In this document: positions 3,202-64,000 of the stretch, piece after piece
Layout of the letters: every line of letters begins with the position of its first letter
How positions within the stretch are numbered: the first letter of the stretch is position 1
Origin: Octopus sinensis
Taxonomy: Eukaryota
DNA: 64,000 nt
Direction of reading: 5' to 3'
Assembly (NCBI RefSeq): GCF_006345805.1
Contig: NC_042998.1
Coordinates: forward strand, 5,332,001-5,396,000
The notes under the pieces: model-generated
The model's input: only the letters and a program-made list of their open reading frames with translations
Told to the model about the DNA's origin: nothing
Databases searched by the model: none
Program-made: the position numbers and the translations under genes

Positions 3202-3232
<31 letters not shown>

Positions 3233-6117: not shown

Positions 6118-6165
<48 letters not shown>

Positions 6166-7170: not shown

Positions 7171-8012
7171 CGCTGAATGTGTAAGTGATATAAGAAAACA
7201 GTTCCCTTAGCGTGACGAACACCGACGGTAGAAGCGTAGAAATGCTCAAGAAAATTACATGTAATCAGTTGTAACTATACTACCATGAGTTTCTTCAGGA
7301 ATACAATGCAACGTTAAAATATCTTTAGCTACATGAAAAAATCTTTATTGTGGAAGTCTACGGTCGCATGCCACCATTTTTAATTTTCACAAACTGTACG
7401 CAAATTGTGTCCAGATGAAAAAATTGGGGAATGTTATGTATGTTTTTGTTTATTATTCAATATTTTCAATAATTTTGATGAATTATTTCAGATGTATCAT
7501 ATTTATGTGTCCAGTGAAAAACCAACAAAAGGACCTCAAAGCTCACACCTCCCGGGGATGTGGAAATGAGGTTTGTGCAATATGTAGCATATGAGCTGTC
7601 GAACTGAAAACATATAAAATTATATTGTATGAAAATATGATTATTTGAAGTATAACACAAAAATAATTTTTAAAAAATTATTCGCTAGTTAAATATGATC
7701 ACTATTTAAAGATGCTTACATTTTTTGCTCGGCGGAATTTAAACTCTGAACGTAATGGCAGATGTAATACCGCTAAGCATTTTTGTTTTCACGGCCCAGG
7801 TAGTTTATATAAATCTGTAGAATAAGTCAGCTATATTTTATATGATAGATAGAAAGAAGAAAAGAGAGTGAGAGAGAAACTGAGTGTGAATGAAACAGAG
7901 AGAGAAAGGGGGGCAGGCAGAAGGCATTTATTAATAATATAAGTATATATTAAGATACTCAGTGGAAGTGTATGTGAAATACATAAGTTACAGCACTTTC
8001 CTATATTACATA

Positions 8013-8172
8013 TATGTCCCCGTCACTTAGCGGTTCGGCAAAAGAGACCGATAGAATAAGTACTAGGCTTACAAAAGAATAAGTCCTGGGGTCGATTTGC
8101 TCGACTAAAGGCGGTGCTCCAGCATGGCCGCAGTCAAATGACTGAAACAAGTAAAAGAGTAAAAGACTAAAG
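8013..8172 (+). mobile_element. 3' half of SINE family A
   Basis: Matches the 3' half of 40877-41379 and ends in (gtaaaaga)n. Confidence 0.8.
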
Positions 8173-8289
8173 AGTACATCGCCATTTTCTTCTTTTCACA
8201 AAGCCAAGGGAAATAGCTCGAATTTAATCCTCACTTATCTCCCTTAGCGTGACAAACACAGACGATACAAGCGTATTAATATACAGATT

Positions 8290-9211
8290 ATTTCAAATTT
8301 TTGCCACAAGAGTAGCTTAGGGGAGGTGGGGATGTGTCGAGTACATCGACCCCAGTATTCAACTGATACTCATTTTATCGGCCCCGAAAGGATGAAATGT
8401 AGGTCGACCTCCACGGAATTTGAACTCAGAACGTAGTAACAGGCGATATACCGCTAAGCATTTCGTCCTGCGCGCTAATGATTGTGCCAGCTCGTCGCCT
8501 TATAGAGGTATCATAATAATCCTTTCTACTATAGGCACAAGGCCTGAAATTTGGTGGGTGGTTAAGTCGATTGTATCGACCCCTGTACTCTACTGCTACT
8601 TAACTTATCGACTCCGAAAGGATGAATGGCAAAGTCGACCTCGGCGGAATTAGAACTCAGAACGTAGCGTCAGGCGAAATACCGCCAAGCATTCTGTCCT
8701 GTATGCTAACGGTTCTACCAGCTCGCCGCCTTATAGACATATCATAATAATCATTTTTATTATAGGCACAAGGCCTGAAATTTGGGGGAGGGGTTAAGTC
8801 GATTATATCGACCCCAGTACTCTACTGGTACTTATTTAATCGACCCCGAAAGGATGAAAGGCAAAGTCGACCTCGGCGGAATTTGAACTCAGAGCGTAGC
8901 GACGGGCGAAATACCGCTAAGCATTCCGTCCTGTATACTAACGGTTCTGCTAGCTCGCCGCCTTCCAGTGTACTAACGATTCTTATTTCTTTATTGCCCA
9001 CAAGGGGCTAAACAGAGGGGACAAACAAGGACAGACAAGGGGATTAAGTCGATTACATCGACTCCAGCGGGTAACTGGTATTTAATTTATCGACCCCGAA
9101 AAGATGAAAGGCAAAGTCGACTTCGGCGGAATTTGAACTCTGAACGTAACGGCAGATGAAATATCACTAAGCATTTCGCCCGGTGTGCTAACGTTTCTGC
9201 CAGCTCGCCGC
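8290..9211 (-). mobile_element. Four head-to-tail copies of tRNA SINE family B
   Basis: Four heads (minus-strand GGCGGCGAGCTGGCAGAA-like) near 8499, 8730, 8960 and 9211. Each is followed by GAGTTCAAATTCCGCCGAGGTCGACTTTGCCTTTCATCCTTTCGGGGTCGAT. Confidence 0.9.
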
Positions 9212-9885
9212 TACATAGGACTAATAGCGTACCTATCAAAATTACAAGTTTTGAGGTCAGTGTTGAATTGATGAATGTGAAGACTGCCTTCGTGTAATAT
9301 GTTAAGAGCAGGTAAACGTATCAGGTAGTTAAAGAATATCCACTTAGAAATCACAAATTATAAGAGGCAACGAAGTGTAGCAATTTTACCGAGAATTAAG
9401 TGTGCGGTTCTTGGATGCTTATTTCATTTGAAGAGCCCTTTTACCACAGGGAATTAAGACAACATATGCAATGCAATCGTTGCAGTTAATTGTATTCTCT
9501 TTTGGAGGAAGCTTAACTTTGTATCTTGCCATTATTAGCACAATAAAATGTGTCAATGTTCTCTTAATATGCAACTCAATGATCCCCATTTACTTAAATT
9601 AAGTACTCTAAAGAATAATTTATTAAACAAGGAAATATATATGCAGTACATTAAATAAAGTGCTGATATGTTGTGTGTATTCTGATGTGGTTATATGGTT
9701 ACTACATAAGTTCAAAGATTAGTGCATCTACACGAACCAGGGGATACGAAGCTATGCACTTAAAGTTACTTAAATCATTACTTGTTTGCCAATTCAATCG
9801 GCGCAGTGTTATATATACAGGATTTACATTAATACCGGAACAAGACTGGTTCTTATTCTATTTCTCCCGTGAGTTAAACAGAAAA

Positions 9886-9928
<43 letters not shown>

Positions 9929-10050
9929 GTGTGTGTGTGTGTGTGTGTGGTGTGTGTGTGTGTATGTGTGTGCGTGTGTGTTGGTGTGTGTGAATAAATG
10001 CGCATTTATGTCAGCGCATGAAAGTGTAGGATATTTTTATCCGAACATCT

Positions 10051-10270
10051 AATAATGGTTTCAAATTTTGGCAGAAGGCCAACAATTTCAAGGGAGTGGG
10101 TTAAATCGATTACATCAACCTCTGTGCTCAACTGGTACTTATATTTATTGACCCCGATAGGATGAAAGGCAAAGTCGACCTAAGCGGAAATTGAACTCAG
10201 GCTGTAGAGACGGACGAAATGCCGGTAAGCATTTTATTGGGCGTGGTAACGACCATGCCAGCTCTCCACC
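10051..10270 (-). mobile_element. SINE family B copy with tail type B
   Basis: Same head and body as 43172; tail ...caaaatttgaaaccattatt. Confidence 0.85.
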
Positions 10271-11755
10271 TTCCGAAACGTCAAATGACAGTGATAATAA
10301 TATAAATAAGAGTTTCTGACTTAGGTTCATTGGTATATATCAGGAAAAGGGTATAGTTGATATAACGTCCTTCTATGGAGAAGCCTGTGTCTAGATGATT
10401 TTCATATTTGAAATAGCAGCCAAATACTTGTTTATATAAAACCCTATTGTCTTCAAAGAGATTAGACTGACTCTTGGATAGTGTGATCCTACATTGACTG
10501 TCTGAAAAAATGATGTAATGATCATGGCTGGAACGTCTTTGACCGTAGGTCAAGACAACCAAGTCTAACTTGAAGATGATAAATTGGAGGTTATAGTAAT
10601 AATGAAGATAATATCGTAGGGTAGAGTTGAGTCCCTTACCAGTGACATCGACTGTGTTTCTAGTCCTAATTGAAGGCATTTTATGACAATATCATGTTTC
10701 CCATTACTCTATAAATTTGTGGTTTTCTGCCGGATTGAGAAATCAATAATGTAATAAAGGGAAAAGGGAAAGATTGTCAGGAGGGGAAAAAATGAGATGT
10801 GTATTCCTCATTGCTTTCAATTTTATGAACCCCATTAAAAGAAATTTAATGTTTTCTTCGTACCAATAAGCTATGTCCTGTAATTCGAAGTAATATGAGT
10901 TATACTTATTGATAGTTCATGTCTTTTGTTGTTGTGAGCTTGTTTTCTTATTTATCTTTTTTCTTTTTGACGAAGGTAAGATTGCATCGTATGCCACAAG
11001 AGATGGTTTAGTAAAGTAAAGCTGTAAAAGGATACAGTTTGCAATAAAAATAATACGAAGGAAAATATGATACATAAAAAAGTAATATGAAGGAAAATAT
11101 ATTACATAAAAAAATAATATAATACAAATGGAATTGAAAAGCAAAAATAAATTTTCATAAAGTATAAAAATATATAATTTAATTATTTAAGATATTAATT
11201 TGTGAATGAATAAATTGCTATGGTTGCTCAGCTTCTCAAACTTTTCTGGAATAGAACTAGATGCCAATCATATTATATATATTCATGGAGACGGTAGTCA
11301 AAAGAATGCAGCGTGGCGAAAGAGTTGGTCGGGACTGGAGCATTTGCTAATATGAAAGGTGAGCAAATTTCATTAAACTGGTAAGATCGGATAAATAATT
11401 AGCAGCGCCGAGCATTGTTGTGTTATAGATTAGCTGCCAGTTATGCGAATTTGTTTCAATCGCAAATACAACCAATTTATTTCAGTTATACGTATATATA
11501 GACATATACTGTAATGGATGATAAATTTATGCATATTTGCATGTAGGTATCTTATCTTTTTATCAGTTTATCTATCTATTTAACCTGTTTACCCGGAGTG
11601 TCCACGCATCCTTTCTAAAGAATGGGATCAGATAGTGCGGACAAATTCTCACAATAAAATACTAAGCGCAGTCACGAAAATAAAGCCCTTTATCTTCATA
11701 CACAGAGTTACATAGCCACTTGATGGTGTGCCACACTAAGAAACTGCCACTCATG

Positions 11756-11826
<71 letters not shown>

Positions 11827-11980
11827 CAGATATGTATGTATGCATGTGTGTATGTATGCATGTGTGTATGTATGTGTGTATGTATTTATGTATGTGTGTA
11901 GTCATTTGTATAATTATTACTATTTTATACGTACACATGCCTCTTAAAATTATTGTTTCTTAATATTAAAATAAAAAAAT

Positions 11981-12479
11981 AAATGCGCCCTTTTAAAGCC
12001 TAGACAGGCTCATGGGCCCGGTTTCCGGGTTTCAATGGCGTATGTGTTCCCCAGCTGGATGGGACGCCAGTCCATCGGAGTGTTACTCATTTTTGCCAGC
12101 TGAGTGGACTGGAGCAACGAGAAATGAAGTGTTTTGCTCAAGACCACAACTTGTCGCCCGGTCCAGGAATCGAAACCACAATCTTATTTCTTTATTGTCC
12201 ACAAGGGGATAAACATAGAGGAGACAAACAAGAACAGACAAAGGAATTACGTCGATTACATCAACCTCAGTGCGTAACTAGTACTTAGTTTATCGACCCC
12301 GAAAGGATGAAAGGCAAAGTCGACCTCGGCGGACTTTAAACTCAGAACGTAAAGACAGAGGAAAATCTGATAAGCGGTTAGCCCGGCGTCCTAACGTTTC
12401 TGCCAGCTCTCCACCTTTCGAAACCACAATCTTACGATCATGATGCTGACATCCTAACCTCTAAGCCACGCGCCTCCAC
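11981..12479 (-). mobile_element. tRNA SINE (family C/D-type head, CORE-like body) split by a nested family B copy at 12186-12417
   Basis: Head gtggaggcgcgtggcttagagg. Body has gtcttgagcaaaacacttc and gatggactggcgtcccatccag. The nested insert is flanked by tcgaaaccacaatctt at 12170-12185 and 12418-12433. Confidence 0.8.
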
Positions 12480-12504
12480 TTCTTAATATTAACTGAATAT
12501 GAAT

Positions 12505-12610
12505 TCTCCTTATTTGACCCCATCTGACTATCATGTATTCTCCAACATGAAAAACCTCTTTGCTGAGAACCAGTATTGCTGTGATGATGACGTCATATCT
12601 GCCGTTGCTC
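12505..12610 (+). mobile_element. Mariner transposase fragment
   Basis: Translates SPYLTPSDYHVFSNMKNLFAENQYCCDDDVISAV, matching YSPDLAPSDYHLF..LK...DDDVI. Confidence 0.65.
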
Positions 12611-13587
12611 CCTGTGAAATTTAGTTATACCTTAAGACAGTCGCTTTGAAGATATTGAGAAAACGAAGGAGGTTTTGACAAGAGTCAAGTATACGTTCAA
12701 TCTGGAGGACTTCCATGGGGTATTCATGATGTGGTTTGAGTACTACAACAAGCGCATTGAAGTCAGATTAGAATTATGTACTTGATCAATGTCCCTCCTG
12801 AAAAACCTCCAGACATCTCGAATTCACCTCGTAGGGCAAATACTTTAAATTATGTTCCTACATTTTCAATAAATTTTGTGTGTTCTAGAGCTAAACTCTT
12901 AGCTTTATGCGATGTTTATTTAAACAACGCTCTTGAAAAGCGACGGATATTTTGTCCATATAAAAACGAAAAAAGCTGACATTTACTGAATAATACATTG
13001 AAGTTCCCACAACAGATTAGCATTTTCATAAAACTATTAAAAATTGTTTCTTTGTGGGGTGGGATTTTGTAATTAAAATGTTTACTTTTCATCAGAAGGA
13101 TACGTATTGCCTACATTGCTTACCCAGAAGACACGTCTATGATACACTCACACACACAAATACAAGTACATATATCTACACTCATATATGTAATGAATAT
13201 AAGGGTATGTTCTTGTCATTATGGTAGAGTCAATGCCATTTTTCGCCCCAGGCTATCCCTGATAGAGCTGATGTTCTATCAAAAATGTTCAAGCTATGAC
13301 CATCCTCAAGCTACCTTTTCTATTATGTTTCTTTTTATTTTGTCTTTATAATTCGATGTTGCTACTTAAAAGATATTCAGATGTTATTCCGATCAGGAGT
13401 AAAAATAATAATATTGTTTTATTTTATTTTATTCATTAATTTTATTTTATTTATCAATTTATGCGAGAATATAAAGATAAATTCATGTTAATGATTTTTA
13501 TCAGGTAGTCGGCACGCAATAAAAATTTATATGTAATATATCCATTACATTGATAATTATATATATGTGTGTATATAATTATATTAA

Positions 13588-13922
13588 GGGAGCAATGGCG
13601 AAAAACGACCTATCTCCAAAATGCTTGAATGCCGAGGCATTCATACAATCCGTGTACATGTTTTGGAGTTCTTCGGTAGTATCTGAATAAGTCGTCATTC
13701 AAGCATGTTGGAGACAGGTATTGTATTAACGAAGGAAAAAAGCTGTTTTACGGCTTTAATCTAGAATTGAACTCATTTCGCAATCAACGTGAAGTCTTTT
13801 TAATGTTTTGTTCACTCGCTCGCCTACAATCGAAGTATATTTTTGGAGCTTTACGGTAGTATTTAAAGGCCTCGGCATTCAAGCATGTTGGAGATAGGTC
13901 GTTTTTTTTCGCCCTTGCTCCC
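13588..13922. mobile_element. MITE with ~55-bp terminal inverted repeats and TTAA target duplication (Kolobok-like)
   Basis: TTAA at 13584-13587, then gggagcaatggcgaaaaacgacctatctccaaaatgcttgaatgccgaggc. The inverse copy ends ...gcccttgctccc, followed by TTAA at 13923-13926. Termini are GG...CC, not the piggyBac CC...GG. Confidence 0.8.
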
Positions 13923-13980
13923 TTAATATGAAAATTATAATATATATGTATTTATTAATTTAACGTATAAATATATATAT

Positions 13981-14043
13981 ATTCATATTCGTTTTATGTA
14001 TTGTCCTCTCTGTGGTGTCCTGTCTGTCCTTGTTTGTCCCCCT
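13981..14043 (+). repeat. LINE-type 3' UTR fragment; an inverted, longer copy lies at 14866-14963
   Basis: attcatattcgttttatgtattgtcc(t/c)ctctgtggtgtcctgtctgtcc...gtttgtcccc occurs on + here and on - at 14866-14963. Confidence 0.65.
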
Positions 14044-14044
14044 C

Positions 14045-14283
14045 GTAAAAAGCACCATCCGTTCGTGGCCGTTGCCAGATTCGTCTGGCACCTGTGCCGG
14101 TGGCACGTAAAAAGCACCCACTACACTCACGGAGTGGTTGGCGTTAGGAAGGGCATCCAGCCGTAGAAACATTGCCAGATAAGACCGGAGCCTGGTGCAG
14201 CCTTCTGGCTTCCCAGACCCCAGTTGAACCATCCAACCCATGCTAGCATGGAAAACGGACGTTAAACGATGATGATGATGATG
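14045..14283 (+). mobile_element. RTE-type retroposon 3' end with (GAT)n tail
   Basis: gttggcgttaggaagggcatccagccgtagaaa...gcatggaaaacggacgttaaacgatgatgatgatg resembles RTE/RTE-SINE 3' ends (recalled, not searched). Confidence 0.6.
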
Positions 14284-14865
14284 ATATATATATATACATA
14301 TATATGCGTCTGCGCGCCCACGCATGTGTTTGTGTGTCTATGTATATGTGTGTGTGTGTGTGTGTGTTTAGGCACACATATACAAACGTACTCATTCACA
14401 TAAATGCACATGCACTTGAACACACACACAGAACACTGCATATAAATGTATCCTGTCTGTCCCTGAGTGCAGAATTATATGTGCTTGTTAATCGTACGCA
14501 GTGTAATGTTAAGAACTGGGGTGATATGTCGTATTTTCTAAACTGTGCAAGGTTTCACTTGTTGTTTTACATTGCTGCTGTTATTGTTGTTGTTACTATT
14601 GTTGCTGTTGTTTTGTCTAATTTCTGAGTCTGGATGAAGGCACAAAACTCAGGACCTTTGCAGACCCTCTAAAACTGGTAACACCGATATCATTGATGTT
14701 CTTTGTAGGTACATACCTACAGGAAACATAACGGGTCGATATTATGTCGATGAAGGATTGGGCAAAATGATAAGTAATGAAAAAGTGAGAGGTTGGATGC
14801 ATCAAGGATGCCGTGAGACGGAAAGAGGAGTGAGACAGTTTACCTGAGTGGTAGAGGCAGGAAAC

Positions 14866-14963
14866 TATGTTTCTTTATTAGCCACAAGGACCCAAAATAG
14901 CGGGGGACAAACAGGGACAGACAGGACACCACAGAGGGGACAATACATAAAACGAATATGAAT
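14866..14963 (-). repeat. LINE-type 3' end related to both the Tx1 tail and SINE family B tail A
   Basis: Minus strand reads tgtctgtccctgtttgtcccccgctattttgggtccttgtggctaataaagaaacata. Confidence 0.65.
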
Positions 14964-15329: not shown

Positions 15330-16330
15330 GGTAGGTCAGTACTAGTGGCAGGAGACTAACCAGCTTCGAGGATCTGAGTCCGTTATAATTGAAGAAGTTA
15401 AAATGGAATGATCTGCAACATATTTATGAAGGAAGTAAAATGGAATTATCTGTGACATGTTTATGAAGGAGTGAAAATGTAATCTTCATAAACATGTCAC
15501 CGACCATTCCACTTTAAGTCCGTTCTATTAGCGATGGGAAAGACAAAGAGAGCGGATACAGCATGCCTGTGAGTCAGAGGCAGGAATGTATCCATTAGTG
15601 ATTGAGTGCTACTCAGTTGAGTAGCCATTCCCTGGCTAGGATCTCGAAAGTCATTTTGAGCAGTAACGGCATCATCCCAATTGTGAAAAAGGAAATTCTT
15701 CCAACCCTAAATAGCAGTGGTAGTATTGGTGCCTTGTTAGCTATAATAAGGATCTACTTTCACGAGAAGTTAACCCATCATTTTCAGCGACCCATAGACT
15801 TTTGCTGTTTGTCGTTCATGTTTAGAATGGCTGTAATGCGGTGGCGTTTTCATGATATGAGGAGCATTTGAGGGTGTTTATTTATTTATTTGTTGTTAAA
15901 AGAAACAAGGTTGGTATGGCTCTACTGGAGAATGTTCTGAAGGTCTCTCTCTACATTTCTGAAATTAATGCAGGTTTGGCGTGCAGTGTCTAGATTGCGT
16001 GTGGATGATGCATTGTTAGGGAATGTTAAGGCGAAATGATAGTTGTGCTATCTGCGTAAGATTACAGGTTGTTGATTGTGACGTGAAATACATCATTAAT
16101 ATATAAAAAGAAGAGAGTGAAGCGCAGAAACGAACGCTTGGGCACACCAAATTTGGAAGTGAAGTGGAAAGAGCTCTGTCAATACCTGCAGCTTTGGTGT
16201 GCAATCTGTTACCGATGTTGTATCGACGTTCGTGTTTCTTGTTTAGCCCCAGTTTATCTCTCAAAAGTTGGCTCCTGGTGAAATACGTTGTAGCAATGAG
16301 CAACCCATGTATTTACCAGACATATAATAT
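15330..16330 (-). mobile_element. Old CR1/L2/Jockey-group LINE RT fragment
   Basis: Minus strand KFGVPKRSFLRFTLFFLYINDVFHVTINNL*SYADSTT (GVPQGS.LGP.LF..YIND...YADD-like) near 16040-16160, then DLQNILQ*SHTNLVSFNNK and KAPILPLL. Heavily decayed. Confidence 0.6.
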
Positions 16331-35649: not shown

Positions 35650-36000
35650 CTGCATGGTGCCAAGGATTCCAACATCACCATCAAAATACAGGTCCAGATA
35701 CTGCAACAGCTTCGGTTTCAGAGGACCACAGCTCTTTAACATCCTCCCTAAATGCCTGAGAGACTTACATGGTGTGGATGTGGGTTTCATTAAAACTAAA
35801 CTGGATCTCTTCTTGTTGGGAGTCCCAGATGAACCTACCTCACGACAGGAGACTCGGATGCGGGCAACAGCATCGAACTCTCTAGTTGATCAAGTGCCAC
35901 CTATCAGAGGTGGATTCACAAATTAGTGTAGCTCATTCAGCGGTGGTGCCCCAGCATGGCCGCGGCCTTCGAGCTAAAACATTTTTAAGGATTTAAGGAT
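35650..36000 (+). mobile_element. 3' end of a CR1/L2-group LINE (end of ORF2 plus 3' UTR) inside (TA)n
   Basis: NSFGFRGPQLFNILPKCLRDLHGVDVGFIKTKLDLFLLGVPDEP...SNSLVDQ matches the F..R...FN.LP...FK..LD.FL C-terminus. The UTR has ggtggtgccccagcatggccgc. Confidence 0.8.
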
Positions 36001-37397: not shown

Positions 37398-38951
37398 ATG
37401 TTTCTTTATTAGCCACACAGGGCTGCACACAGATAGAACAAATTACAAGGTAGAGCTTTTCTTTTGAAGGTTTAAAAAAAAAAAAAAATAAAATAAAATA
37501 AAATAAAAAATAAAAAAAAATAAAAAAAAATAAAATAAAATAAAATAAAATAAAAAAGGGGGGTCGATCAAAAGGGATCGTAAAAGGAGAGAAAGAGGAC
37601 AAAAAAAGGGGGGGGGTTAAAAAAAAGGGGGAGAGGAAAAAATTGATCAATAGGGATCGTTATCACAAAATGTCAATATGAAGTGTAAAGGGGGGGACAG
37701 GTGAGGTTTACCCGTGGAAAGAAAAGCCTACGGAAAAGACCACGGTAACCTCGGTCATGAAGTCACATGTTATATTTCTTTTTTTTTTTTGCAAATAAGC
37801 AACTCTCTGTATTAATTTTTACGGTTCATAGAATCATAGTCAAGGTGGCTTCGTCATTCATACGTGCCATCCTTGCTACATTCACCCATCTTTTTTAAAA
37901 CATTCACTAGACAAAACTTGCCTCTCTACTCTCACTTTTTTCTTCAAGTGATACTTGAAGAAGTTGATGAGAGATTGACCAGAGAGGAAGTGTTGTCTCT
38001 AATCCTTTCAGACGCGTCCACCAGATACATTCTTTCGCCATAGCCACAAGTATGATAAAAATAGCTCTTCCTTCCCGTTTGAAGGAAGGAGGCGTGACGA
38101 TATTAACGATAGACTCGGCTGATAAACCGACACGTCCCACACGTGACAGCAGTCGTTCGACATAAGCCCACAGGTGGGAATTGCTGGACACTGCACGATT
38201 GCGTGCAGAGCGTTTTCGTCGCTCTGCCGCATTTCGGGCAGGTCGGCCCCGTTTTCTCGAGCCATGCCTATAGAGCTTATCCCGAACGGGTAGCGCTTCT
38301 CGGTAGCACCGCCAGGCCAGGGATCTCTGGAAGTTGTCCATAGGTCCCGGGCCGAAAGTCGTTTGAAACAGGCGGGTCAGGTATTCCTCGTCGACGCCCA
38401 GGTTTGCCCCGAGCTCGTCGTCGTACCTCCCCTCCACTAATCCCCTATAGAATGCTTTGGTTGTGTTGAAGTCACTCAAGGTCGACCCGGGACGGCAGAG
38501 TTGCTTGAGAGCAACGCGACACCTCGCGGTGCCATTCGCCCTTCTTCGGCCTCTTTTTGATCCACGACTGTAGTTCGGTCATGGAGACGAGTTGCGGGAA
38601 TGCGTGCCTCACAAACGGCGACCACACCTGTTCACCGTCGTCTACATAGAGCCGGAGATGTCGCAGTCTCAGCGCGTGTCTGCGCATCATCAACCACGGC
38701 ATGCCCAGCCCTCCTTTTGACGGGTTGTGACAGCAAATGGATCGCCTGACCATCGGGACGCATCCTTTCCACAAGAAGCGGAAGAGGATGCGTTCTAGTT
38801 TGGTGATGGTAGGGTCGGGACAAGGTACGACGGTCAGGCGGTAGTAGATGATGGACGCGATGTACGCGTTCACCACCTCCGCCCGACCTTTTAGGGACAG
38901 TTTCCTCTCGGCCCATTGCTGGGCGAGAGTGACCACCCTACTCGTTATCTC

Positions 38952-38952
<1 letters not shown>
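37398..38952 (-). mobile_element. 5'-truncated L1/Tx1-clade LINE (RT C-terminus, CCHC knuckle, 3' UTR) inside (GATA)n
   Basis: QQWAERKLSLKGRAEVVNAYIASIIYY...FLWKG...KGGLGMP; RSLAWRCYREALPVRDKL; CPKCG...ALHAIVQCP knuckle in a shifted frame. 3' end gccctgtgtggctaataaagaaacat. (GATA)n lies at about 37277-37397 and 38953-39050. Confidence 0.9.
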
Positions 38953-39014
<62 letters not shown>

Positions 39015-39154
39015 TAGATAGATATAGATAGATAGATAGATAGATAGATACGTTATGCATGCATATTCATATATATGCATGTGTGTATGGGTGTGTGTTG
39101 TGCATTTAATTCATTCGATCGATTTCCTATATAATACTGCATATAAAAGACACC

Positions 39155-41379: not shown

Positions 41380-43171
41380 TCCTGAAAGGATGAAAGGCAA
41401 AGTTGACCTCAGTGGAATATATTAGAAATATTACGCGTAACACACCGTTGCAATCGTGCTATTCCCTTATCTTCGTTGTTAAAATCCCATTTCAGCTGTT
41501 GTGCTTTCTGGCTTTCTTCTCGCGTGTGTCATATTTAATAATTTTCGCTTTTACCTTTTATTCAGTTCGTGGAAAGTAAATTGTTTTCATGCTGCTGTTC
41601 ATGCTTGGAATATTTTTGTATTGGTTATTCTGGTGCTTTTAGTGTCCCTTGCTTGTGATTCTTGAATCAAGTACAGAAAGAATCACTGAACAAGGGTTGA
41701 GCTGACACCGACTAAGTAATTGAAGACATTTAACATTTAGCACTTCATCACTGCTTTTGTTCATTATATCACCGACCCAAAGGTCAATTAGGTGATGGAA
41801 GTTAAGAGCTTTACACCTAATAATTTTATGGTCTTATGGAGGAAGAAGGATGTTATCAATCTCTGTGGAACGAGGTCAAGATAATAGGGAACAACACAGA
41901 AAGATATGGCATCTGATAACTAAGTTTTGATAGCCATATTAGGTTTAGCATAAAGATGAAAATCAAATAGGAACCTTCAGTTACGAAAGAACAGTAAATC
42001 TAAAACCCTAAACGAGGTGACTGTAAATCTCCTAACTTTCATTATCTAATTGTCCTAATCGTCAATTATATAGTGAATATAAGAACTGATTATATACCAA
42101 GCTAGTCGGGTGTGTGTTCCTGAGTCGGAGATTCTATATAGAATCTAGTTAAAATGTAATGAGCAAGCGGCATCGCATGCACGAGAATAAGTAATACGAG
42201 AATACCCCAAGAGTGGACAACAAAACGAAAACAATCTACTTCATATATTAAATAAAGAGTTGGTTTGAAAGTACAAGATGATACCGAAAACAAGACGGGC
42301 TTGAAGAGGGCAGTACAAGAGGTGAAAATTTCTAACTAAAGCAACTGAAGAGAGAACACTAGTCCACAAATATCAGTATGTTATAATTCCTGATCACAAA
42401 AATTTCAACAATTACAATATTAAAGATTCTACATATATTAGACGGTTCTAGACAAAAATATACTTGTCTACAGCAGTTTTCATATGAAAATATCCCTGGT
42501 TTCAATACTGCAATGCGATAATGGACTTTGTTTATCAAAAGATCATAACGGGTATTTATAATTGTGTGACATTTGTTTTTGTCACTACAACAAAACTAAT
42601 ATAAATTGTTTCTAGGGAGAATCCTTGAGCGTCTGTAAAATAACTTCTGATATTGGTCTGGACCATTCAACGTTCAAATCTCGCTTGGTTCAACTTAGCT
42701 TTTTTCTTTTTCAATCCTTCGTCTTCATAAAGTAAAGGACCAGTCACGTTCTGAGTTTGACGATATTGATTGATATCATCCACTCAAAATAGCTGGCCTT
42801 GTACTGAAATCAGAAGCAGCTATGTATTGATTCCCTAATCTATTATAAATACTTCATCTTGACATTATACATGAAACGTTGAGAAGAGATTTAAGAAAAG
42901 TAAACTGAAGTGTGTTCCGCTTTCAAAGCATGATAATTTTTGCGATCCGTACTATAAACTAATGAGATGGGTGTTAATGGTGGAGCGCTTTAATTTCATT
43001 GGGTTACATGGGCCACAGGGACTCATGTGTACTTTTTAATGTATTACTGTTAATTGATCATTCATTAGGACGTTCAATAATTTACTTACTTGACTATCAT
43101 CAACCAAAAGAAATGTAGCTTATCATATTCTTTTCCCCAACTCAATACTCACCATTATTAGGACTTACTAA

Positions 43172-44660
43172 GGCGGCGAGCTGGCAGAATCGTTAGCACG
43201 CCGGGTGAAATGTTTAGTGGTATTTCGTTTGTCGCTATGATCTGAGTTCAAATTCCGCCGAGGTCGACTTTGCCTTTCATCCTTTCGGGGTCGATAAATT
43301 AAGTACTAGTTACGCACTGGAGTCGATGTAATCGACTTAACCCCTTTGTCTCTCCTTGTTTGTCGCCTCTATGTTTAGCCCCTTGTGGGTAGTAAAGAAA
43401 TAGGTATTTCGTCTGTCGCTATGTTCTGAGTTCAAATTCCGCCGAGGTCGACTTTGCCTTTCATCCTTTCGGGGTCGATAAATTAAGTACTAGTTCGCAC
43501 TGGAGTCGATGTAATCGACTTACCCCTTTGTCTCTCCTGTTTGTCGCCTCTATGTTTAGCCCCTTCTGGGTAGTAAAGAAATAGGTATTTCGTCTGTCGC
43601 TATGTTCTGAGTTCAAATTCCGCCGAGGTCGACTTTGCCTTTCATCCTTTCGGGGTCGATAAATTAAGTACTAGTTACGCACTGGAGTCGATGTAATCGA
43701 CTTAACCCCTTTGTCTCTCCTTGTTTGTCGCCTCTATGTTTAGCCCCTTCTGGGTAGTAAAGAAATAGGTATTTCGTCTGTCGCTATGTTCTGAGTTCAA
43801 ATTCCGCCGAGGTCGACTTTGCCTTTCATCCTTTCGGGGTCGATAAATTAAGTACTAGTTACGCACTGGAGTCGATGTAATCGACTTAACCCCTTTGTCT
43901 CTCCTTGTTTGTCGCCTCTATGTTTAGCCCCTTCTGGGTAGTAAAGAAATAGGTATTTCGTCTGTCGCTATGTTCTGAGTTCAAATTCCGCCGAGGTCGA
44001 CTTTGCCTTTCATCCTTTCGGGGTCGATAAATTAAGTACTAGTTCGCACTGGAGTCGATGTAATCGACTTAACCCCTTTGTCTCTCCTTGTTTGTCGCCT
44101 CTATGTTTAGCCCCTTCTGGGTAGTAAAGAAATAGGTATTTCGTCTGTCGCTATGTTCTGAGTTCAAATTCCGCCGAGGTCGACTTTGCCTTCATCCTTT
44201 CGGGGTCGATAAATTAAGTACTAGTACGCACTGGAGTCGATGTAATCGACTTACCCCTTTGTCTCTCCTTGTTTGTCGCCTCTATTTTAGCCCCTTGTGG
44301 GTAGTAAAGAAATAGGTATTTCGTCTGTCGCTATGTTCTGAGTTCAAATTCCGCCGAGGTCGACTTTGCCTTTCATCCTTTCGGGGTCGATAAATTAAGT
44401 ACTAGTTACGCACTGGAGACGATGTAATCGACTTAACCCCTTTGTCTCTCCTTGTTTGTCGCCTCTATGTTTAGCCCCTTCTGGGTAGTAAAGAAATAGG
44501 TATTTCGTCTGTCGCTATGTTCTGAGTTCAAATTCCGCCGAGGTCAACTTTGCTTTTTATCCTTTTTGAGTCGATAAACTAAATCCCAGTGGAACACTGA
44601 GGTCGATGTAATCGACTCTTCCCCTCCCTCAAAATGGCTGCTCTTGTGGAAAAATTTGAA
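43172..44660 (+). repeat. Tandem array of SINE family B: one head, seven ~184-bp units with tail A, and a last unit with tail B
   Basis: The motif tctgagttcaaattccgccg starts at 43241, 43425, 43606, 43790, 43974, 44157, 44337 and 44521. accattattaggactta flanks both ends (43151-43167 and 44661-44677). Confidence 0.97.
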
Positions 44661-45038
44661 ACCATTATTAGGACTTAATACAAAATACCTTGTTCAAATT
44701 CCACACTGTTCTTCTAATCCAAGACGGATTATTCTATATAATATGGGCAATACCATTCATTAAATAAATACGAAGAGGAAATAGCTTTTACTTTTTACTT
44801 GCTTCAAGCATTAGATCTCGGCATGGCTTGGGCACCACCTGAAAGTGTTTGTCAAACAAATCGACTCCAGCAGTTATTGTTTTAATATCTGGTACTTACT
44901 TATTCTATTGGTCGCTTTTGCCGAGCCATTTTGTTGCGGTGAGGTAAACAAACCAACACCGGTTGTACGCGATGAATGTGGACAAAACAGAACGCAATGA
45001 GACATGCACACACACACACACACACACATACACATATA

Positions 45039-48236: not shown

Positions 48237-48274
<38 letters not shown>

Positions 48275-48289
48275 TTCTACTGAAGGTAC

Positions 48290-48475
48290 AAGGGCTAGAT
48301 TTTGAGGGGAGGGGCTAGCCGATTACGTCGACCCCAGGGTTTCACTGGTACTTAAGTTATCGACCCCAAAAGGGATAAGTCGAACTCGGCGGAATCTGAA
48401 CTCAGAAGGTAGCGACGAGCGAAATACTGTTAAGCATTTCGTCCAGCTTGCTAACAATTCTGCCAGTTCGTCGCT
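48290..48475 (-). mobile_element. SINE family B copy with a (TAA)n tail
   Basis: Family B head and body; tail runs into (taa)n at about 48238-48272. Confidence 0.8.
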
Positions 48476-48479
48476 CGTA

Positions 48480-48950: not shown

Positions 48951-49830
48951 TATGGTCGGTAACATAAGTACCAGTTGCGTACTGGGGCCTATGTAATCGA
49001 CTTAACCCTCCCCCTATCTTGCTGGCCTTCTTCCAAAATTTGAAAGCATTATTGGTAGGGGGTGAGCTGGCAGAATCGTTAGCTCGTTGGATGAAATGCT
49101 TAGCGATATTTCGCCCGTCGCTACGTTCTGAGTTCAAATTCCCTCGAGGTCGACTTTATCTTTCATACTTTCTGGGTCGATAAATTAAGTACCAGTGAAA
49201 CCCTGGAGAGTCGATGTAATCGACTTCTCTCCTCCACCAAAGTGGCTGCCATTGTAGCAAAATTTGAAAGCATTTTTATAATTTATGTCCCAATCATTCG
49301 ATTCTATTATAAATTTTTAATAGATTTTTTCATATTTGTGTTTTTCATTGTATCGTCCACTCTATGTTTGCCCTCCACCCCTGTGGGCAATAAAGAATTA
49401 AGAATCGTTAATCGGGCGAAATACTAAGCGCTATTTCGTCTGCGTTACGTTGTGAGTTCAAATTCCGCCGAGGTCGACTTTGCCTTTCATCCTTTCGGGG
49501 TCGATAAATTAAGTACCAGTTACGCACTGGTGTCGATGTAATCGACTTAACACCTATGTATGTCCTTGTTTGTCCCCTCTGTGTTTAGCCCCTTGTGGGT
49601 AATAAAGAAATAGGTATTTCGACTGCCGTTACGTTCTGATTTCAAATTCCGCCAAAGTCGACTTTGCCTTTCATCCTTTCGGGGTCGATTAAATAAGTAC
49701 CAGTTATACACTAGGATCGATATAATCGACTTAATCCGTTTGTCTGTCCTTGTTTGTCCTCTCTGTGTTTAGTCCCTTGTGAGTAGTAAAGAAATAGGTA
49801 TTTCGTTTGCCGTTGCGTTCTGAGTTCAAC
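48950..49830 (+). mobile_element. Cluster of family B SINE copies including tail A-to-GGTATTTCG junctions
   Basis: Head near 49060 with tail B, then body-plus-tail A units joined at aaagaaata/ggtatttcg near 49612 and 49797. Confidence 0.85.
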
Positions 49831-50784
49831 TTTCGCACGAACATTTGATCATTATAAATAAGTCATTTGTGAAGGTCGTTTAGCAAAAGATGGACGCTCA
49901 TACGTACTCTTCGACGAGAGAAACCATCATACGCGCACACACACACACACACACACATACACACCCACCCGCGCGCGCGCGACTTTGCTTTCATCCTTTT
50001 GGAGTCGATTAAATGAATACCAGTAACTACTGGAGTCGATGTAATCGGCTTAATCCGTTTGTCGATCCTTGTTTGTCCCTTCTATGTTTAACCCACTGTG
50101 GGCCATAAAGAAATAACAATTTCATTCTGCAAACTGAGTGTGTGTGAGTGTCGTTGTTATATCAAACGTTGTTACTAGAAACATTCTCACTCATGTTGCT
50201 GGCTTCAAAAATCTCATTTGTTATCGAAAAATCGTTTCGTTCATTTTCTTTCATTTCCTTTTTTTCTTTTCTTTTCTGCATGACAAAGTAAATACCAATT
50301 CCTTTTGGTTCAAATTTTCTTCACGTGATCTGTAGGATCCTATTGGAAAAAAGCAAAACAATCTTGTTTGTTTATGAATAATGAACGAAATATTTTCTTC
50401 GAAAATTAAAGAACTTTTCACCGCTGGTGAAGAATTGTTGCAATCCTTTCTAAGTAGAAATTCTGCAATAAATAAAACAATTTTCCGTCTAATTTCACAC
50501 GTTTCATACTTTTATTGTGTTGAAAGAGCAAGAAATAACAGGTCTAGCTGACACATAAACGAAAATAATATAAATAGCCGCAGTAAAAAGAAAATATTAA
50601 AGAAAGGGTGTATGGCGTACAACTTGACGAAAAGCCCCTTTACAAAGTTTCAGATGCTCAGATGCAAAGCAGGATAAACATCTTAGAACATAGATATACA
50701 CATACTATTACACAGACATGCATATTTATATATATACACACATATATATATATACAAACATACATACATGCATATATATATATG

Positions 50785-50822
<38 letters not shown>

Positions 50823-50850
50823 AACATACATATATGCATATATATATATG

Positions 50851-50895
<45 letters not shown>

Positions 50896-50899
<4 letters not shown>

Positions 50900-51390
50900 A
50901 GCCTAAATCACTTAAAAAGATTCTCACAAAGGCAAAATTGTCTTCTAAAATTACGGATGCAAAAGTTAAAAAATGTGGTAGATCGAACTGTGCAACATGT
51001 CCTAACCTATTGGAAGGATCAGAATTCTTCTTTAAAGAGGGACAGAAATTTAAGATCAAATCTAACTTTACTTGTGCCTCTGAAAACATAATTTATGTTA
51101 TTAAATGCTCGGGCTGCCACCAAGACTACGTGGGTTCCACGGGACTATCACTCAGGCGCAGATGCACACTGCATCGACAACAGATTGCATTCCCAGAATA
51201 TAGAATGATACCTTTTAGTGAGCACATCGAGAAATGCGCAAAGCAACTACTGCCACAATTTTTAATCTTCCCATTTTACCAATGTGCTTTCGGATCATCA
51301 ACACAAATGAGACTGAACAAGGAAACATTCTTCATTGAAAAGTACAAACCCAGACTCAACCATCCGAACATACTGACACAGAGAAATTAA
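50896..51390 (+). mobile_element. Penelope-like GIY-YIG endonuclease, open over ~165 codons
   Basis: [14 protein letters not shown]...[11 protein letters not shown] (Cys linker)...[36 protein letters not shown]...FSEH...[17 protein letters not shown]. Confidence 0.92.
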
Positions 51391-56284: not shown

Positions 56285-56305
56285 AAGGAGGAGGAGGAGG
56301 AGGAG

Positions 56306-56515
56306 GGCGGTGAGCTGGCAGAATCGTTAGCCCGCTGGGCGAAATGCTTAGCGGCATTTCTTCCGTCTTTATGTTCTGAGTTCAAATTCCGCCGAGGTCG
56401 ATTTTGCCTCTCATCCTTTCGGAGTCGATAAATTAAGGACCAGTTACGCACTGGGATCGATGCAATCTACTTAATCCCTACCCCCAAAAAATTTGAAGCC
56501 TTGTGCTTCCAGTAG
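56306..56515 (+). mobile_element. SINE family B copy between (GTA)n tracts
   Basis: Full head and body with tail B; (gta)n on both sides. Confidence 0.85.
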
Positions 56516-56518
56516 ACG

Positions 56519-56570
<52 letters not shown>

Positions 56571-57211: not shown

Positions 57212-58260
<1,049 letters not shown>

Positions 58261-62706: not shown

Positions 62707-62734
62707 TTAGTTTAATAGGTATAATCTTAATCAA

Positions 62735-63170
62735 GGCGGCGAGCTAGCAGAAACCTTAGCACGCCGGGCGAAATGCTAGCGGTATTTCGTCTGCTGCTAC
62801 GTTCTGAGTTCAAATTCCGCCGATGGTAAATTTTTTTTTAAATCGTTCGACTTTGCCTTTCATCCTTTCGGGGTCGATTAAATAAGTACCAGTTACGCAC
62901 TGCGGTCAATATAATCGACTTAATTCGTTTGTCTGTCCTTGTTTGTCCCTTCTGTGTTTAGCCCCTCGTGAGTAGTAAAGAAATAGGTATTTCGACTGCC
63001 GTTACGTTCTGAGTTCAAATTCCGCCGAGGTCGACTTTGCCTTTCATACTTTCGAGGTCGATTAAATAAGTACCAGTTACGCACTGAGGTCGATGTAATC
63101 GACTTAATCCGTTCGTCTGTCCTTGTTTGTCCTTTGTGTGTTTAGCCCCTTGTGGGTAGTAAAGAAATAA
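62735..63170 (+). mobile_element. SINE family B dimer (head, unit, GGTATTTCG junction, unit)
   Basis: Junction aaagaaata/ggtatttcg near 62985. aggtataatcttaa flanks both ends (62717-62730 and 63170-63183). Confidence 0.9.
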
Positions 63171-64000
63171 GGTATAATCTTAAGCTTCTGTTAACTTGAT
63201 GTATTTAGTTCGATTCTTTCCACTCTTATAAATAATTTGCAACACAGACTTAACTCATGATTCAGATTTATAAGAGTTTGTAAGGGAGAATAGAACCGGT
63301 CATGTGACGTGCATAACTTTCTCAATGCTTTTCCAATGCAAACAAAACTGATACGGTAGCAATTTAGATTCAAAATTTACCTTCTAATTTCCCTTTCATC
63401 ATTTCTGTAAGAGTACCTTATCGTAACTCATTTCTTTAGTTTTAGTATCGATTGCTTTTTTGTTGTTTTTGTTTTGATAAAATATACTGCAAAGGTAAGT
63501 TATGGTTAATTACATCGATATCAGTTTGTAATTAGTACTCATTTCATCAATAGGATCAAATAAAACAGTAAACCTGGCAGATTTTCGAAACGAGAATGAG
63601 AACTGACCCATACAACTTAAATCGTGAAGCTTTCTACAGCTGTCTTTTCTGCCTATCAGCCATAAGCAAAAGAGTGAATCAATACATTAGTACAAGATAA
63701 CAGATTTGTAAAGGATGGGTGCAACTGATCGTATCAATTATAATATATTTCCAAAGCTAATTTTCTCAGCCTCAGATGAATGTCATTGAAGGTCGACCCT
63801 AGCAGGATTTCAGCTTGGAACACTGAAGTTTAAAATCAAAAACTATGTACTCTTGCTGCTAAATTGGCACTTTTCCTTTGCTCTGATATTGACATCTTAC
63901 ACAGATATACTATTTGAAACTTGTAGAAAAGGAGAGATGCAAACGATTTAATATTCATTATTTAGTCAAAGTAAGGAGGCGAGCGAACAGAATTGTTAGC

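What the first reader, a model, noticed from the sequence alone, without database searches (positions are those of the whole stretch)
43151..44680. Eight-unit SINE multimer enclosed by a single apparent target-site duplication
Seen: one full tRNA-like head, seven 180-184-bp units each restarting at GGTATTTCG inside the head, and a last unit ending in a different tail. The array is flanked by accattattaggactta(c/a)ta on both sides. Units share variants (gtactagtt, gtcgcctct) absent from most dispersed copies, and differ mainly by single-base deletions in runs. Inference: either the multimer was inserted in one event (template jumping or rolling-circle reverse transcription of a ~184-nt RNA) or it expanded in place, as a SINE becoming a satellite. 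Each unit keeps a B box but lacks the A box.
Basis: partly seen in the sequence, partly recalled or inferred. Interest (0 to 1): 0.8.

Follow-up and report, generated by a model that had tools for sequence, protein, structure and literature searches.

The report
Octopus SINE expanded into tandem array
At one site in an octopus genome, a 184-base piece of a short mobile element (SINE) is repeated seven times in a row; this is a clear but fairly ordinary example of a mobile element seeding a satellite-like repeat, a process already described in clams and reptiles.

Summary
At 43151-44680 there is one SINE head, seven 180-184-bp units each restarting at GGTATTTCG, and an eighth unit with a different body and tail. 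A 17/17 (19/20) direct repeat flanks the whole. The window is Octopus DNA, about 98% identical to O. vulgaris chromosome OX597815.1.

The single flanking duplication does not tell one-step insertion from local expansion. The internal anatomy does. The homogeneous zone (43241-44545) ends inside the first and last units. Units 2-7 equal the first 47 nt of unit 8 plus the rest of unit 1, which is what one unequal crossover in the conserved B-box segment would give. Units differ by 0.4% in substitutions, while the single-copy edges are as decayed as other dispersed copies.

The best reading has two stages. An old composite element was made by reverse transcription: the exact 3' end of one SINE was joined to nt 48 of the next. 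The same 18-nt junction occurs at three loci in the window. A recent in-place amplification then took it from 2 to 8 units.

The architecture matches the TSD-(SINE)n-TSD multimers of a blood clam and the SINE-derived satellites of squamates. It is a new member of a known kind. I could not check copy number against reads or the orthologous site.

The parts
43151..43170 (+). Left flanking direct repeat accattattaggactta+cta (the target-site duplication of the outer element)
   Evidence: The 17-mer occurs only at 43151 and 44661 in the window. Local alignment of the two flanks finds only this 20-nt match, 19/20.
43170..43218 (+). SINE head (aaggcggcgag...), with a box-A-like motif TGGCAGAATCG at 43182-43192. 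Present once only.
   Evidence: No tRNA match from ARAGORN or Rfam.
43219..43402 (+). Unit 1 (184 nt). Carries two private substitutions, at 43229 (T) and 43240 (A). From 43241 onward it matches the later units except at one site.
43403..44498 (+). Units 2-7, starting at 43403, 43584, 43768, 43952, 44135 and 44315. Each runs from GGTATTTCG to the exact 'B-type' 3' end ...GTAGTAAAGAAATA. Only 2 substitution sites vary among them. There are 8 one-base deletions, in units 2, 5 and 6.
   Evidence: Mean pairwise substitution divergence is 0.37%.
44499..44545 (+). First 47 nt of unit 8, identical to units 2-7. This is the right edge of the homogeneous zone 43241-44545.
44546..44670 (+). Old 'A-type' body and tail of unit 8 (...cagtggaacactg...cttcccctccctcaaaatggctgctcttgtggaaaaatttgaa + accattatta). 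Two T5 runs at 44554 and 44563.
   Evidence: About 20% from the family consensus, like other dispersed A-type copies. The tail consensus TTTGAAA[CG]CATT is shared with the copies at 10050-10065(-), 49039 and 49263.
44661..44680 (+). Right flanking direct repeat accattattaggactta+ata. Its first 10 nt overlap the A-type tail consensus.
62717..63183 (+). Independent locus. A B-type dimer with the same junction (62977-62994), ending in AAAGAAATA and flanked by its own 14-bp duplication AGGTATAATCTTAA (62717 and 63170). Its two units are 92% alike.
49350..50115 (+). Independent locus. A composite of: a 50-nt B-tail fragment; a second junction type (tail joined to AGAATCGTTA in box A, at 49392); a unit; J1 (49604); a unit; J1 (49788); and a unit interrupted at 49837-49974. 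The units belong to different sub-types (87% alike).
12170..12432 (-). B-type monomer with a 15-bp duplication AGATTGTGGTTTCGA. With the dimer at 62717-63183, it fixes the true 3' terminus of the B type as ...AAAGAAATA.
   Evidence: The ortholog is present in O. vulgaris at L005 2089-2321.

Best explanation
The array has a two-stage origin.

**Stage 1 (old, inferred).** One LINE-mediated insertion placed a composite SINE at this site. It consisted of a head, one unit with the 'B-type' body and tail, and then a head-less unit with the 'A-type' body and tail. The two units were joined at junction J1. In J1 the exact 3' terminus of the B-type SINE (...AAAGAAATA) abuts nt 48 of the next SINE (GGTATTTCG), which is the first base after the loop of the conserved hairpin in the head. 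A junction that uses the exact RNA 3' end is the signature of reverse transcriptase moving onto the 3' end of a second SINE RNA, not of a DNA duplication.

**Stage 2 (recent, largely shown by the sequence).** An unequal crossover, or replication slippage, between the two units occurred in the only long stretch they shared, the B-box segment at unit positions 23-47. This created a hybrid 184-bp unit. Further unequal exchange multiplied that unit until there were seven near-identical units, all inside the original target-site duplication.

The array is most likely a neutral proto-satellite. Its eight box-B-like motifs could bind TFIIIC, but that is speculation.
For: **Shown by the sequence**
1. 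The homogeneous zone runs from 43241 to 44545, which is 7 x 184 + 25 nt minus 8 deletions. Its edges fall inside unit 1 and unit 8.
2. Units 2-7 equal unit 8 positions 1-47 plus unit 1 positions 23-184. That is the predicted product of one crossover in positions 23-47. Both private substitutions of unit 1 lie in its first 22 nt, and there are none in the next 162 nt. By chance that has probability (22/184)^2 = 0.014.
3. Units 1 and 8 differ at 2 sites in positions 1-22; only 2 of 119 other copy pairs are that close (mean 5.8). They differ at 0 sites in positions 23-47, and at 19 sites in positions 48-127, which is about average.
4. At alignment column 190, units 1 and 6 keep the ancestral G found in every other B copy. 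Units 2-5 and 7 share a derived C. Identical copies of one template would not show this.
5. The units are far younger than the edges. Mean substitution divergence is 0.37% among units 2-7, against 1.35-2.07% between this window and the orthologous O. vulgaris DNA. The B part of the unit is 11/137 from the B consensus, like dispersed copies (8-14/137, one at 20/137). Unit 8's 3' part is about 20% from consensus, like other A copies.
6. Four array variants (gtcgcctct, ctctcc, gctatgttc, aacccctttg) are absent from all other copies in the window, L005 and L006. This fits a unit that aged in place before it multiplied.

**Evidence that J1 was made by reverse transcription and recurs**
7. The B terminus AAAGAAATA is fixed by copies with their own flanking duplications, at 12170-12432 and 62717-63183.
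8. The identical 18-mer occurs at three loci. At these loci it joins units of different sub-types.
9. Of 9 B-type tails in the window, 6 abut one of two fixed sites in a SINE head.
10. A 5'-truncated B copy in O. sinensis starts within 6 nt of the J1 site and has its own 16-bp duplication.

**Known precedent:** the same architecture is described in Scapharca broughtonii (PMC11481361) and in squamates (PMC10702118).
Against: - I could not obtain the orthologous site or any reads, so neither the ancestral dimer nor the present copy number has been seen directly.
- The flanking repeat is nearly perfect (19/20). That is better preserved than expected if the outer insertion is as old as unit 8's roughly 20% divergence suggests. 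CpG-rich SINE DNA does decay faster than AT-rich flanks.
- 'Private' variants were judged from only about 94 kb and roughly 10 other B copies. They could mark a subfamily instead.
- Units 1 and 8 are unusually alike in positions 1-47, although their remainders belong to different types. A simple jump between unrelated RNAs does not predict this. It implies either later conversion or a homology-guided step when the dimer formed.
- The eight one-base deletions cluster in three units and may be long-read consensus errors.
Confidence: 0.6

Rival explanations
1. The whole 8-mer was inserted in one retrotransposition event. Either reverse transcriptase jumped seven times from nt 48 of one SINE RNA to the 3' end of the next, or it copied a multimeric RNA transcribed from a multimer elsewhere.
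For: - A single flanking repeat encloses everything.
- J1 uses the exact RNA 3' end and recurs at other loci. One is a dimer with its own duplication. Another is a composite whose left end, a 50-nt tail fragment joined at the second junction type, is easiest to explain by serial jumps.
- The units contain no T4 run, so a long Pol III transcript is conceivable.
Against: - It needs an A-to-B template switch at unit position 47 plus six or seven precise jumps.
- It does not predict that unit 1 differs only in positions 1-22, nor the G/C pattern among units.
- The other J1 loci have only 2-3 units, and those are 87-92% alike, so old multimers are short.
- The initiating A-type RNA would have to be a heavily decayed copy.
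Confidence: 0.12
2. An old A-type monomer received the B-type array by ectopic gene conversion, or by break repair copied from a B-type multimer (or its cDNA) located elsewhere. Both ends of the tract lie in the conserved B-box segment.
For: - The head plus unit 1 positions 1-47, joined to unit 8 positions 48 onward, reconstruct a normal-looking A-type monomer.
- Both borders of the homogeneous zone lie in or next to the most conserved 25 nt.
Against: - Positions 1-22 of the repeated unit carry the local, A-like version GTCGCTATG. They do not carry the GCCGTTACG found in most of the other B copies. The unit was therefore built from this locus's own sequence.
- No donor with the array's variants turned up, although only about 94 kb could be scanned.
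Confidence: 0.12
3. The copy number is an assembly artefact. The real locus has fewer units (for example 2-4), or a different number.
For: - Two units are identical.
- The only indels are one-base deletions clustered in units 2, 5 and 6, a pattern typical of imperfectly polished long-read consensus in repeats.
Against: - A 1.3-kb array is well within a single long read, and assemblers tend to collapse such repeats rather than inflate them.
- The units carry a structured set of substitutions (unit 1, unit 7, and G/C at alignment column 190).
- Shorter arrays with the same junction exist at two other loci.
Confidence: 0.08
4. Rolling-circle reverse transcription of a 184-nt circular RNA (GGUAUUUCG...AAAGAAAUA).
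For: - The last 6 nt of the unit (GAAATA) are the reverse complement of TATTTC, which lies 2 nt after the junction. The two ends of such an RNA could therefore pair next to each other.
- The period is constant.
Against: - The product carries a head at one end and a foreign, diverged tail at the other. Each is joined at a homologous position, not at the circle junction.
- The units are not uniform at alignment column 190.
- At the other loci J1 joins units of different sub-types.
- No RNA data are available.
Confidence: 0.03

Closest known systems
TSD1-(SINE)n-TSD1 multimers of HCD SINEs in the blood clam Scapharca broughtonii (PMC11481361)
   Same: The architecture is the same. One flanking duplication encloses a first unit with a complete head, middle units that lack the head, and a last unit with the same head truncation and the complete tail. 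Arrays there reach 4-15 units. The host is also a mollusc.
   Different: - In the clam the middle units are truncated in the tail as well. Here each unit ends at the exact 3' terminus of the SINE, and the last unit belongs to a different tail type.
- The clam authors propose unequal recombination between TSDs. That cannot make the J1 junction seen here.
SINE-derived satellites (sSat) of squamate reptiles (PMC10702118)
   Same: - Tandem repeats are derived from part of a SINE, with longer terminal units that reach the SINE termini.
- There are many short variable loci and a few long homogeneous ones.
- The proposed route is a primary duplication, then amplification, then homogenisation.
   Different: - Squamate arrays reach up to 1000 units and favour subtelomeric regions. 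Here there are 8 units, and the chromosomal context is unknown.
- The SINE family and its LINE partner are different.
Complex (dimeric or multimeric) SINEs that amplify as such, for example Alu and the Dip/B1 multimers of jerboa (as summarised in PMC10702118 and PMC3531059)
   Same: - A dimer with its own flanking duplication exists at 62717-63183.
- Two post-junction units at different loci share a private base (A at unit position 10). This hints that some dimers were copied as dimers.
   Different: - Those elements are made of whole SINEs or two heads. Here the second unit lacks the head up to nt 47.
- The 8-unit array shows the marks of local amplification, not of transposition.
End-to-end template jumping by non-LTR reverse transcriptases (R2, L1); cited from general knowledge, not tested here
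   Same: It joins the 3' end of a new RNA to the point where the first template ends. That is what J1 and the second junction type look like.
   Different: Here the donor end is not the RNA's 5' terminus. It is one of two fixed internal positions, nt 48 and nt 15. That requires a processed 5' end or a strong stop at those positions, and neither has been shown.
PcH-Sat satellite of the limpet Patella caerulea, proposed to derive from a Nin-SINE (PMC11121367)
   Same: It is a mollusc satellite traced to a SINE (title and abstract only).
   Different: It is a mature, abundant satellite. The locus here is at a nascent stage, with its SINE ends and flanking duplication still intact.

Membership tests
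SINE (LINE-mobilised short interspersed element) | Short, interspersed, many copies | tested here: met
   BLAST found 27 hits in the 64 kb on both strands. Further copies are present in O. vulgaris L005 and O. sinensis L006. The genome-wide copy number was not counted.
SINE (LINE-mobilised short interspersed element) | Variable target-site duplications flank individual copies | tested here: met
   Duplications of 14 bp (62717/63170), 15 bp (12170/12418), 17-20 bp (43151/44661) and 16 bp (L006), each with a different sequence.
SINE (LINE-mobilised short interspersed element) | Head derived from a tRNA, with internal Pol III boxes A and B | tested here: inconclusive
   Box-A-like and box-B-like motifs each match 9/11, but equally weak matches are frequent in the window (88 and 109). 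There is no tRNA call from ARAGORN and no Rfam match at E<=10. The head folds as a long hairpin.
SINE (LINE-mobilised short interspersed element) | 3' region shared with a partner LINE | tested here: inconclusive
   A homolog of the B tail without a SINE head lies at 14868-14960(-). A homologous tail ends a different SINE in Argonauta hians. No LINE open reading frame was linked to this tail.
SINE-derived satellite / TSD-(SINE)n-TSD multimer | Tandem units that are a portion of a SINE, with terminal units reaching the SINE ends | tested here: met
SINE-derived satellite / TSD-(SINE)n-TSD multimer | Units within a locus more alike than copies between loci (local amplification or homogenisation) | tested here: met
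   Units are 98-100% alike within the array, against 81-93% to B copies at other loci. Four variants are private to the array.
SINE-derived satellite / TSD-(SINE)n-TSD multimer | Recurrence at several loci of the genome | tested here: met
   The same junction occurs at three loci in the window, with 8, 3 and 2 units. This is the only long array seen.
SINE-derived satellite / TSD-(SINE)n-TSD multimer | Long arrays, heterochromatic or subtelomeric location | not testable with these tools
   Only about 94 kb of non-redundant Octopus DNA was accessible. The window's ortholog lies at 209.7 of 215.6 Mb on OX597815.1, about 6 Mb from one end. That fact alone settles nothing.
Dimeric SINE family that transposes as a dimer | Dimers with their own duplications at many loci, and position-specific diagnostic bases | tested here: inconclusive
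   There is one clean dimer (62717-63183). Second units at two loci share A at unit position 10, and their first 22 nt are identical. Overall identities do not cluster by position.
Rolling-circle reverse-transcription product | Uniform units, both array ends at the circle junction, junction-spanning circular RNA | tested here: not met
   The array ends are joined at homologous internal positions to a head and to a foreign tail. Units differ at alignment column 190 in a G,C,C,C,C,G,C pattern. RNA could not be tested.

The most novel reading that the evidence does not exclude
Octopus SINE RNAs may be cut, or reverse transcription may stop, at two fixed places in the head: nt 48, at the loop-stem border of a conserved hairpin and reminiscent of tRNA-half cleavage, and nt 15. 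The partner LINE's reverse transcriptase would then jump from there onto the 3' end of another SINE RNA. That would make a site-specific, RNA-level mechanism that routinely produces head-less SINE multimers across the genome and so supplies the seeds of new satellites. The complementarity between the tail end (GAAAUA) and UAUUUC just after the junction could help dock the next RNA.
Probability: 0.25. Interest if true: 0.6.

Novelty: new member of a known kind. Interest (0 to 1): 0.35.

Why it matters
- **A caught intermediate.** Octopus genomes are crowded with SINEs: about one copy per 2-3 kb in this window. This locus shows the transition from interspersed element to tandem repeat at an early stage. 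The SINE ends, the flanking duplication and the crossover signature are all still readable.
- **An argument from sequence alone.** It shows that the first junction was made at the RNA level and the later units at the DNA level.
- **A possible seeding route.** If the recurrent junction reflects a fixed RNA end or a reverse-transcription stop in the head hairpin, it would explain why some SINE families seed satellites and others do not. The squamate study left that question open.
- **A practical point.** Such arrays are likely to vary in copy number and to be mis-assembled, and repeat annotators will split them.

Tried and rejected
**Searches that led nowhere**
1. *More junction-bearing loci.* A 50-aa translation across the junction found nothing in the protein collection. 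The one metagenome scan for the 20-mer returned a chance match inside a bacterial gene (L001).
2. *The orthologous site.* TE open reading frames from the window led to O. vulgaris (L005, orthologous to window 1-14493), O. sinensis (L006, paralogous) and Argonauta hians (L002). None reaches the 43-kb site. Exact look-ups of window ORFs next to the array found nothing on record.
3. *A tRNA origin for the head.* ARAGORN and Rfam gave no match.
4. *A decayed SINE just upstream that could explain ACCATTATTA in the left flank.* Alignment scores fell below those of shuffled sequence.
5. *Literature.* I found no paper on octopus SINE multimers, and no paper text containing this SINE's sequence. PMC4795812 is not held.

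**Ideas considered and set aside**
6. *J1 as a nested insertion into a preferred DNA target in resident SINE heads.* The 14-bp duplication at 62717 begins AGGTAT, like the J1 site. However, this model fails at the left end of the 49350 composite, where no resident head precedes the tail fragment. It also gives no primer-tail homology for J1.
7. *J1 as a deletion between the GAAAT repeats of a head-to-tail pair.* This predicts a different junction sequence.
8. *A higher-order repeat.* The shared deletions (units 2 and 5; units 2 and 6) do not fit any single block size.
9. *Covariation support for the head hairpin.* It is weak: 2 of 23 pairs.
Full report
**What is there**

Window 43151-44680 holds the following, in order:
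- a 20-nt direct repeat, accattattaggactta + cta;
- a 49-nt SINE head (43170-43218);
- seven units of 180-184 nt, each running from GGTATTTCG to ...GTAGTAAAGAAATA;
- an eighth unit that starts the same way but continues with a different body and tail;
- the direct repeat again (ata in place of cta).

Tandem Repeats Finder reports period 184, 7.6 copies and 96% matches. The 17-mer occurs only at these two places in the window. The junction 18-mer has 10 exact matches, against 0.13 expected by chance.

**Which genome**

A Helitron-like ORF at 4169-4615 is 98% identical to a hypothetical protein of Octopus vulgaris. Its locus, L005 (OX597815.1, 209.69 Mb), aligns with window 1-14493 with 1.35-2.07% substitutions. 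The window therefore comes from Octopus, either O. vulgaris or a very close relative. I could reach only about 30 kb of further Octopus DNA (the remainder of L005, and L006 from O. sinensis), plus one Argonauta locus (L002).

**The SINE family**

BLAST finds 27 pieces of this element in the window. All share a head and a core. Two tail types follow the core.
- *'A-type'* ends ...CTTGTGG(C)AAAATTTGAAA(C/G)CATTATT..., or in related variants that run into (ATT)n.
- *'B-type'* has about 30 extra nt and ends ...CCCCTTGTGGGYARTAAAGAAATA.

Two B copies with their own target-site duplications fix the B terminus as AAAGAAATA: 12170-12432(-) with 15 bp, and 62717-63183 with 14 bp. The head has weak box-A-like and box-B-like motifs. 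It is not recognised as a tRNA. It folds as a long hairpin whose apex, GAAAUGCU-UAGC-GGUAUUUC, is conserved in sequence.

**A recurrent junction**

In the array, each unit's exact B terminus abuts GGTATTTCG. That is nt 48 of the SINE, the first base after the hairpin loop. I call this junction J1.

The same 18-mer, without a mismatch, occurs at two other loci:
- a dimer with its own duplication (62717-63183; units 92% alike);
- a composite at 49350-50115 with two J1 junctions, whose units are of different sub-types (87% alike).

A second junction type joins the B tail to AGAATCGTTA at nt 15, inside box A. It occurs at 8973-8992(-) and 49392-49411.

Of the nine B tails in the window, six abut one of these two head positions. 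An O. sinensis copy is 5'-truncated within 6 nt of the J1 site and has its own 16-bp duplication.

The junction uses the true RNA 3' end, and it joins unlike units. I therefore infer that it is made during reverse transcription: cDNA synthesis leaves one SINE RNA at a fixed point and continues on the 3' end of another. The left end of the 49350 composite is a 50-nt tail fragment with no resident head in front of it. That fits this reading better than insertion into a preferred DNA site does.

Why nt 48 is not established. Three ideas remain open: an RNA cut at the loop border, a stop to reverse transcription, or docking through the 6-nt complementarity between the tail end GAAAUA and UAUUUC 2 nt after the junction. 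I tested none of these.

**How the eight units arose**

The enclosing duplication cannot decide between the models, because internal expansion leaves it in place. The pattern inside the array can.

1. Among units 1-7 only four columns carry substitutions. There are also eight one-base deletions, confined to units 2, 5 and 6. Units 3 and 4 are identical.
2. Both private substitutions of unit 1 lie in its first 22 nt (43229 and 43240). There are none in the following 162 nt.
3. Unit 8 is identical to units 2-7 for exactly 47 nt. It is then 76% alike at best over its length, with an A-type body and tail.

The homogeneous zone is therefore 43241-44545. Each internal unit equals unit 8 positions 1-47 plus unit 1 positions 23-184. 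That is what a single unequal crossover between unit 8 and unit 1 would produce, within the 25 nt they share exactly (the B-box segment). Further unequal exchange between the now near-identical neighbours would add the rest.

Supporting numbers:
- Units 1 and 8 differ at 2, 0 and 19 sites in positions 1-22, 23-47 and 48-127. Other copy pairs average 5.8, 2.6 and 17.0.
- The chance that both private substitutions of unit 1 fall in the first 22 nt is 0.014.
- At alignment column 190, units 1 and 6 keep the ancestral G, and the other five share a derived C.
- The unit's B part is as far from the B consensus (11/137) as dispersed copies are.
- Four of its variants occur nowhere else in the sampled DNA.
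- Unit 8's 3' part is as decayed as other A copies.

Unit-to-unit divergence (0.37%) is a fraction of the divergence between this window and O. vulgaris (1.35-2.07%). I therefore predict fewer units at the orthologous O. vulgaris site.

By contrast, the older tandem of four full-length SINEs at 8328-9211 has the same four copies in O. vulgaris.

**What remains uncertain**

- The ancestral dimer is inferred, not seen.
- The flanking repeat (19/20) is better preserved than the decayed A-type part would suggest.
- Its first 10 nt equal the A-type tail consensus. Either the target resembled the tail, or the duplicated target proper is only about 10 nt.
- Units 1 and 8 are unusually close in their first 47 nt. 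This hints at a homology-guided step or at later conversion.
- Import of the array by ectopic conversion, insertion of the whole 8-mer in one event, and assembly error in the copy number are not excluded. I give them 0.12, 0.12 and 0.08. Rolling-circle reverse transcription fits the composite ends poorly (0.03).

**Comparison with what is known**

The architecture matches the 'TSD1-(SINE)n-TSD1' multimers of the blood clam Scapharca broughtonii: a full head first, head-less middle units, a complete tail last, and arrays of 4-15 units (PMC11481361). It also matches the SINE-derived satellites of squamates, for which a route of primary duplication, amplification and homogenisation was proposed (PMC10702118). 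Multimeric and dimeric SINEs and a SINE-derived limpet satellite are also on record.

Two things differ here. The unit boundary is the exact SINE 3' terminus joined to a fixed position in the head hairpin, and it recurs at independent loci. The last unit belongs to another tail type, and that is what exposes the crossover history.

I found no description of this in cephalopods, but the search covers open-access text only.

**Verdict**

This is a real feature and a new member of a known kind. Interest is moderate. The locus is a textbook-quality intermediate between a SINE and a satellite. The recurrent junction is a lead worth a genome-wide census.

Noticed in passing
window 8328-9211 (-): Four full-length SINEs lie head to tail with a period of about 232. 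The first is a B-type followed by a 19-nt head fragment joined through the second junction type. Then come three A-types, two of which are each followed by the same ~10-nt spacer ta(t/c)(g/c)tctata. This is the '(SINE-TSD)n' pattern. The same four copies are present in O. vulgaris (L005 5323-6208).
   Followed up: partly
window 49350-50115 (+): A composite of a B-tail fragment and three units, joined by one junction of the second type and two J1 junctions. The third unit is interrupted at 49837-49974 by about 140 bp that end in (CA)n/(CG)n. A weak 7-nt flanking repeat (TTTCATT) may mark a single insertion.
   Followed up: partly
window 14868-14960 (-): About 70 nt homologous to the B-type tail (…tgtctgtccctgtttgtcccc…ccttgtggctaataaagaaaca) with no SINE head or core in front. 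This may be the 3' end of the partner LINE.
   Followed up: no
window 56303-56520 (+) and 48270-48478 (-): One A-type copy is flanked on both sides by (GTA)n. Another ends in a long (ATT)n. These SINE tails merge with microsatellites, which suggests either insertion into simple repeats or their growth from the tail.
   Followed up: no
window 12100-12500 (-): The B-type monomer here sits inside what looks like a different tRNA-like repeat (ggaggcgcgtggcttagaggttagga…gtggtttcga | ttcctggaccgggcgac…).
   Followed up: no
window 4169-4615 (-), 37907-39080 (-), 50608-51390 (+), 35654-35926 (+): Open reading frames derived from transposable elements: a Helitron/PIF1-like fragment (98% to an O. vulgaris hypothetical protein), a frameshifted LINE reverse-transcriptase C-terminal fragment (64% to an Argonauta hians zf-RVT protein), and, judged by eye only, a Penelope-like GIY-YIG fragment and a LINE 3' end.
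   Followed up: partly
window 57212-58259 and 57457-57540: A 1-kb (AT)n tract. ARAGORN's only 'tRNA' in the window (tRNA-Ile, anticodon tat) lies inside it and is almost certainly spurious.
   Followed up: no
L002 (Argonauta hians BAAFZT010000007.1) 4903-5362: Three full copies of a different SINE with a more tRNA-like head lie in tandem. Its tail is homologous to the B-type tail (…cttgtggctaatagagaaatc). The copies are joined tail to 5' end, with period 157 and 96% matches, and are preceded by (ATT)n. Tandem SINEs may be a general trait of elements that use this tail.
   Followed up: partly
L006 (O. sinensis CM016860.1) 15526-15688 (-): A 5'-truncated B-type copy that begins within 6 nt of the J1 position. 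It has its own 16-bp duplication TATATATATACCGTAT and GTAT microhomology at the 5' joint.
   Followed up: partly
window 43394-43411 and the other J1 sites: The J1 18-mer, which includes a CpG, has no mismatch at the three old junctions (49604, 49788, 62977), although the surrounding units are 8-13% diverged. It forms a near-palindrome, GAAATA-GG-TATTTC. This could be chance, conversion or constraint.
   Followed up: no
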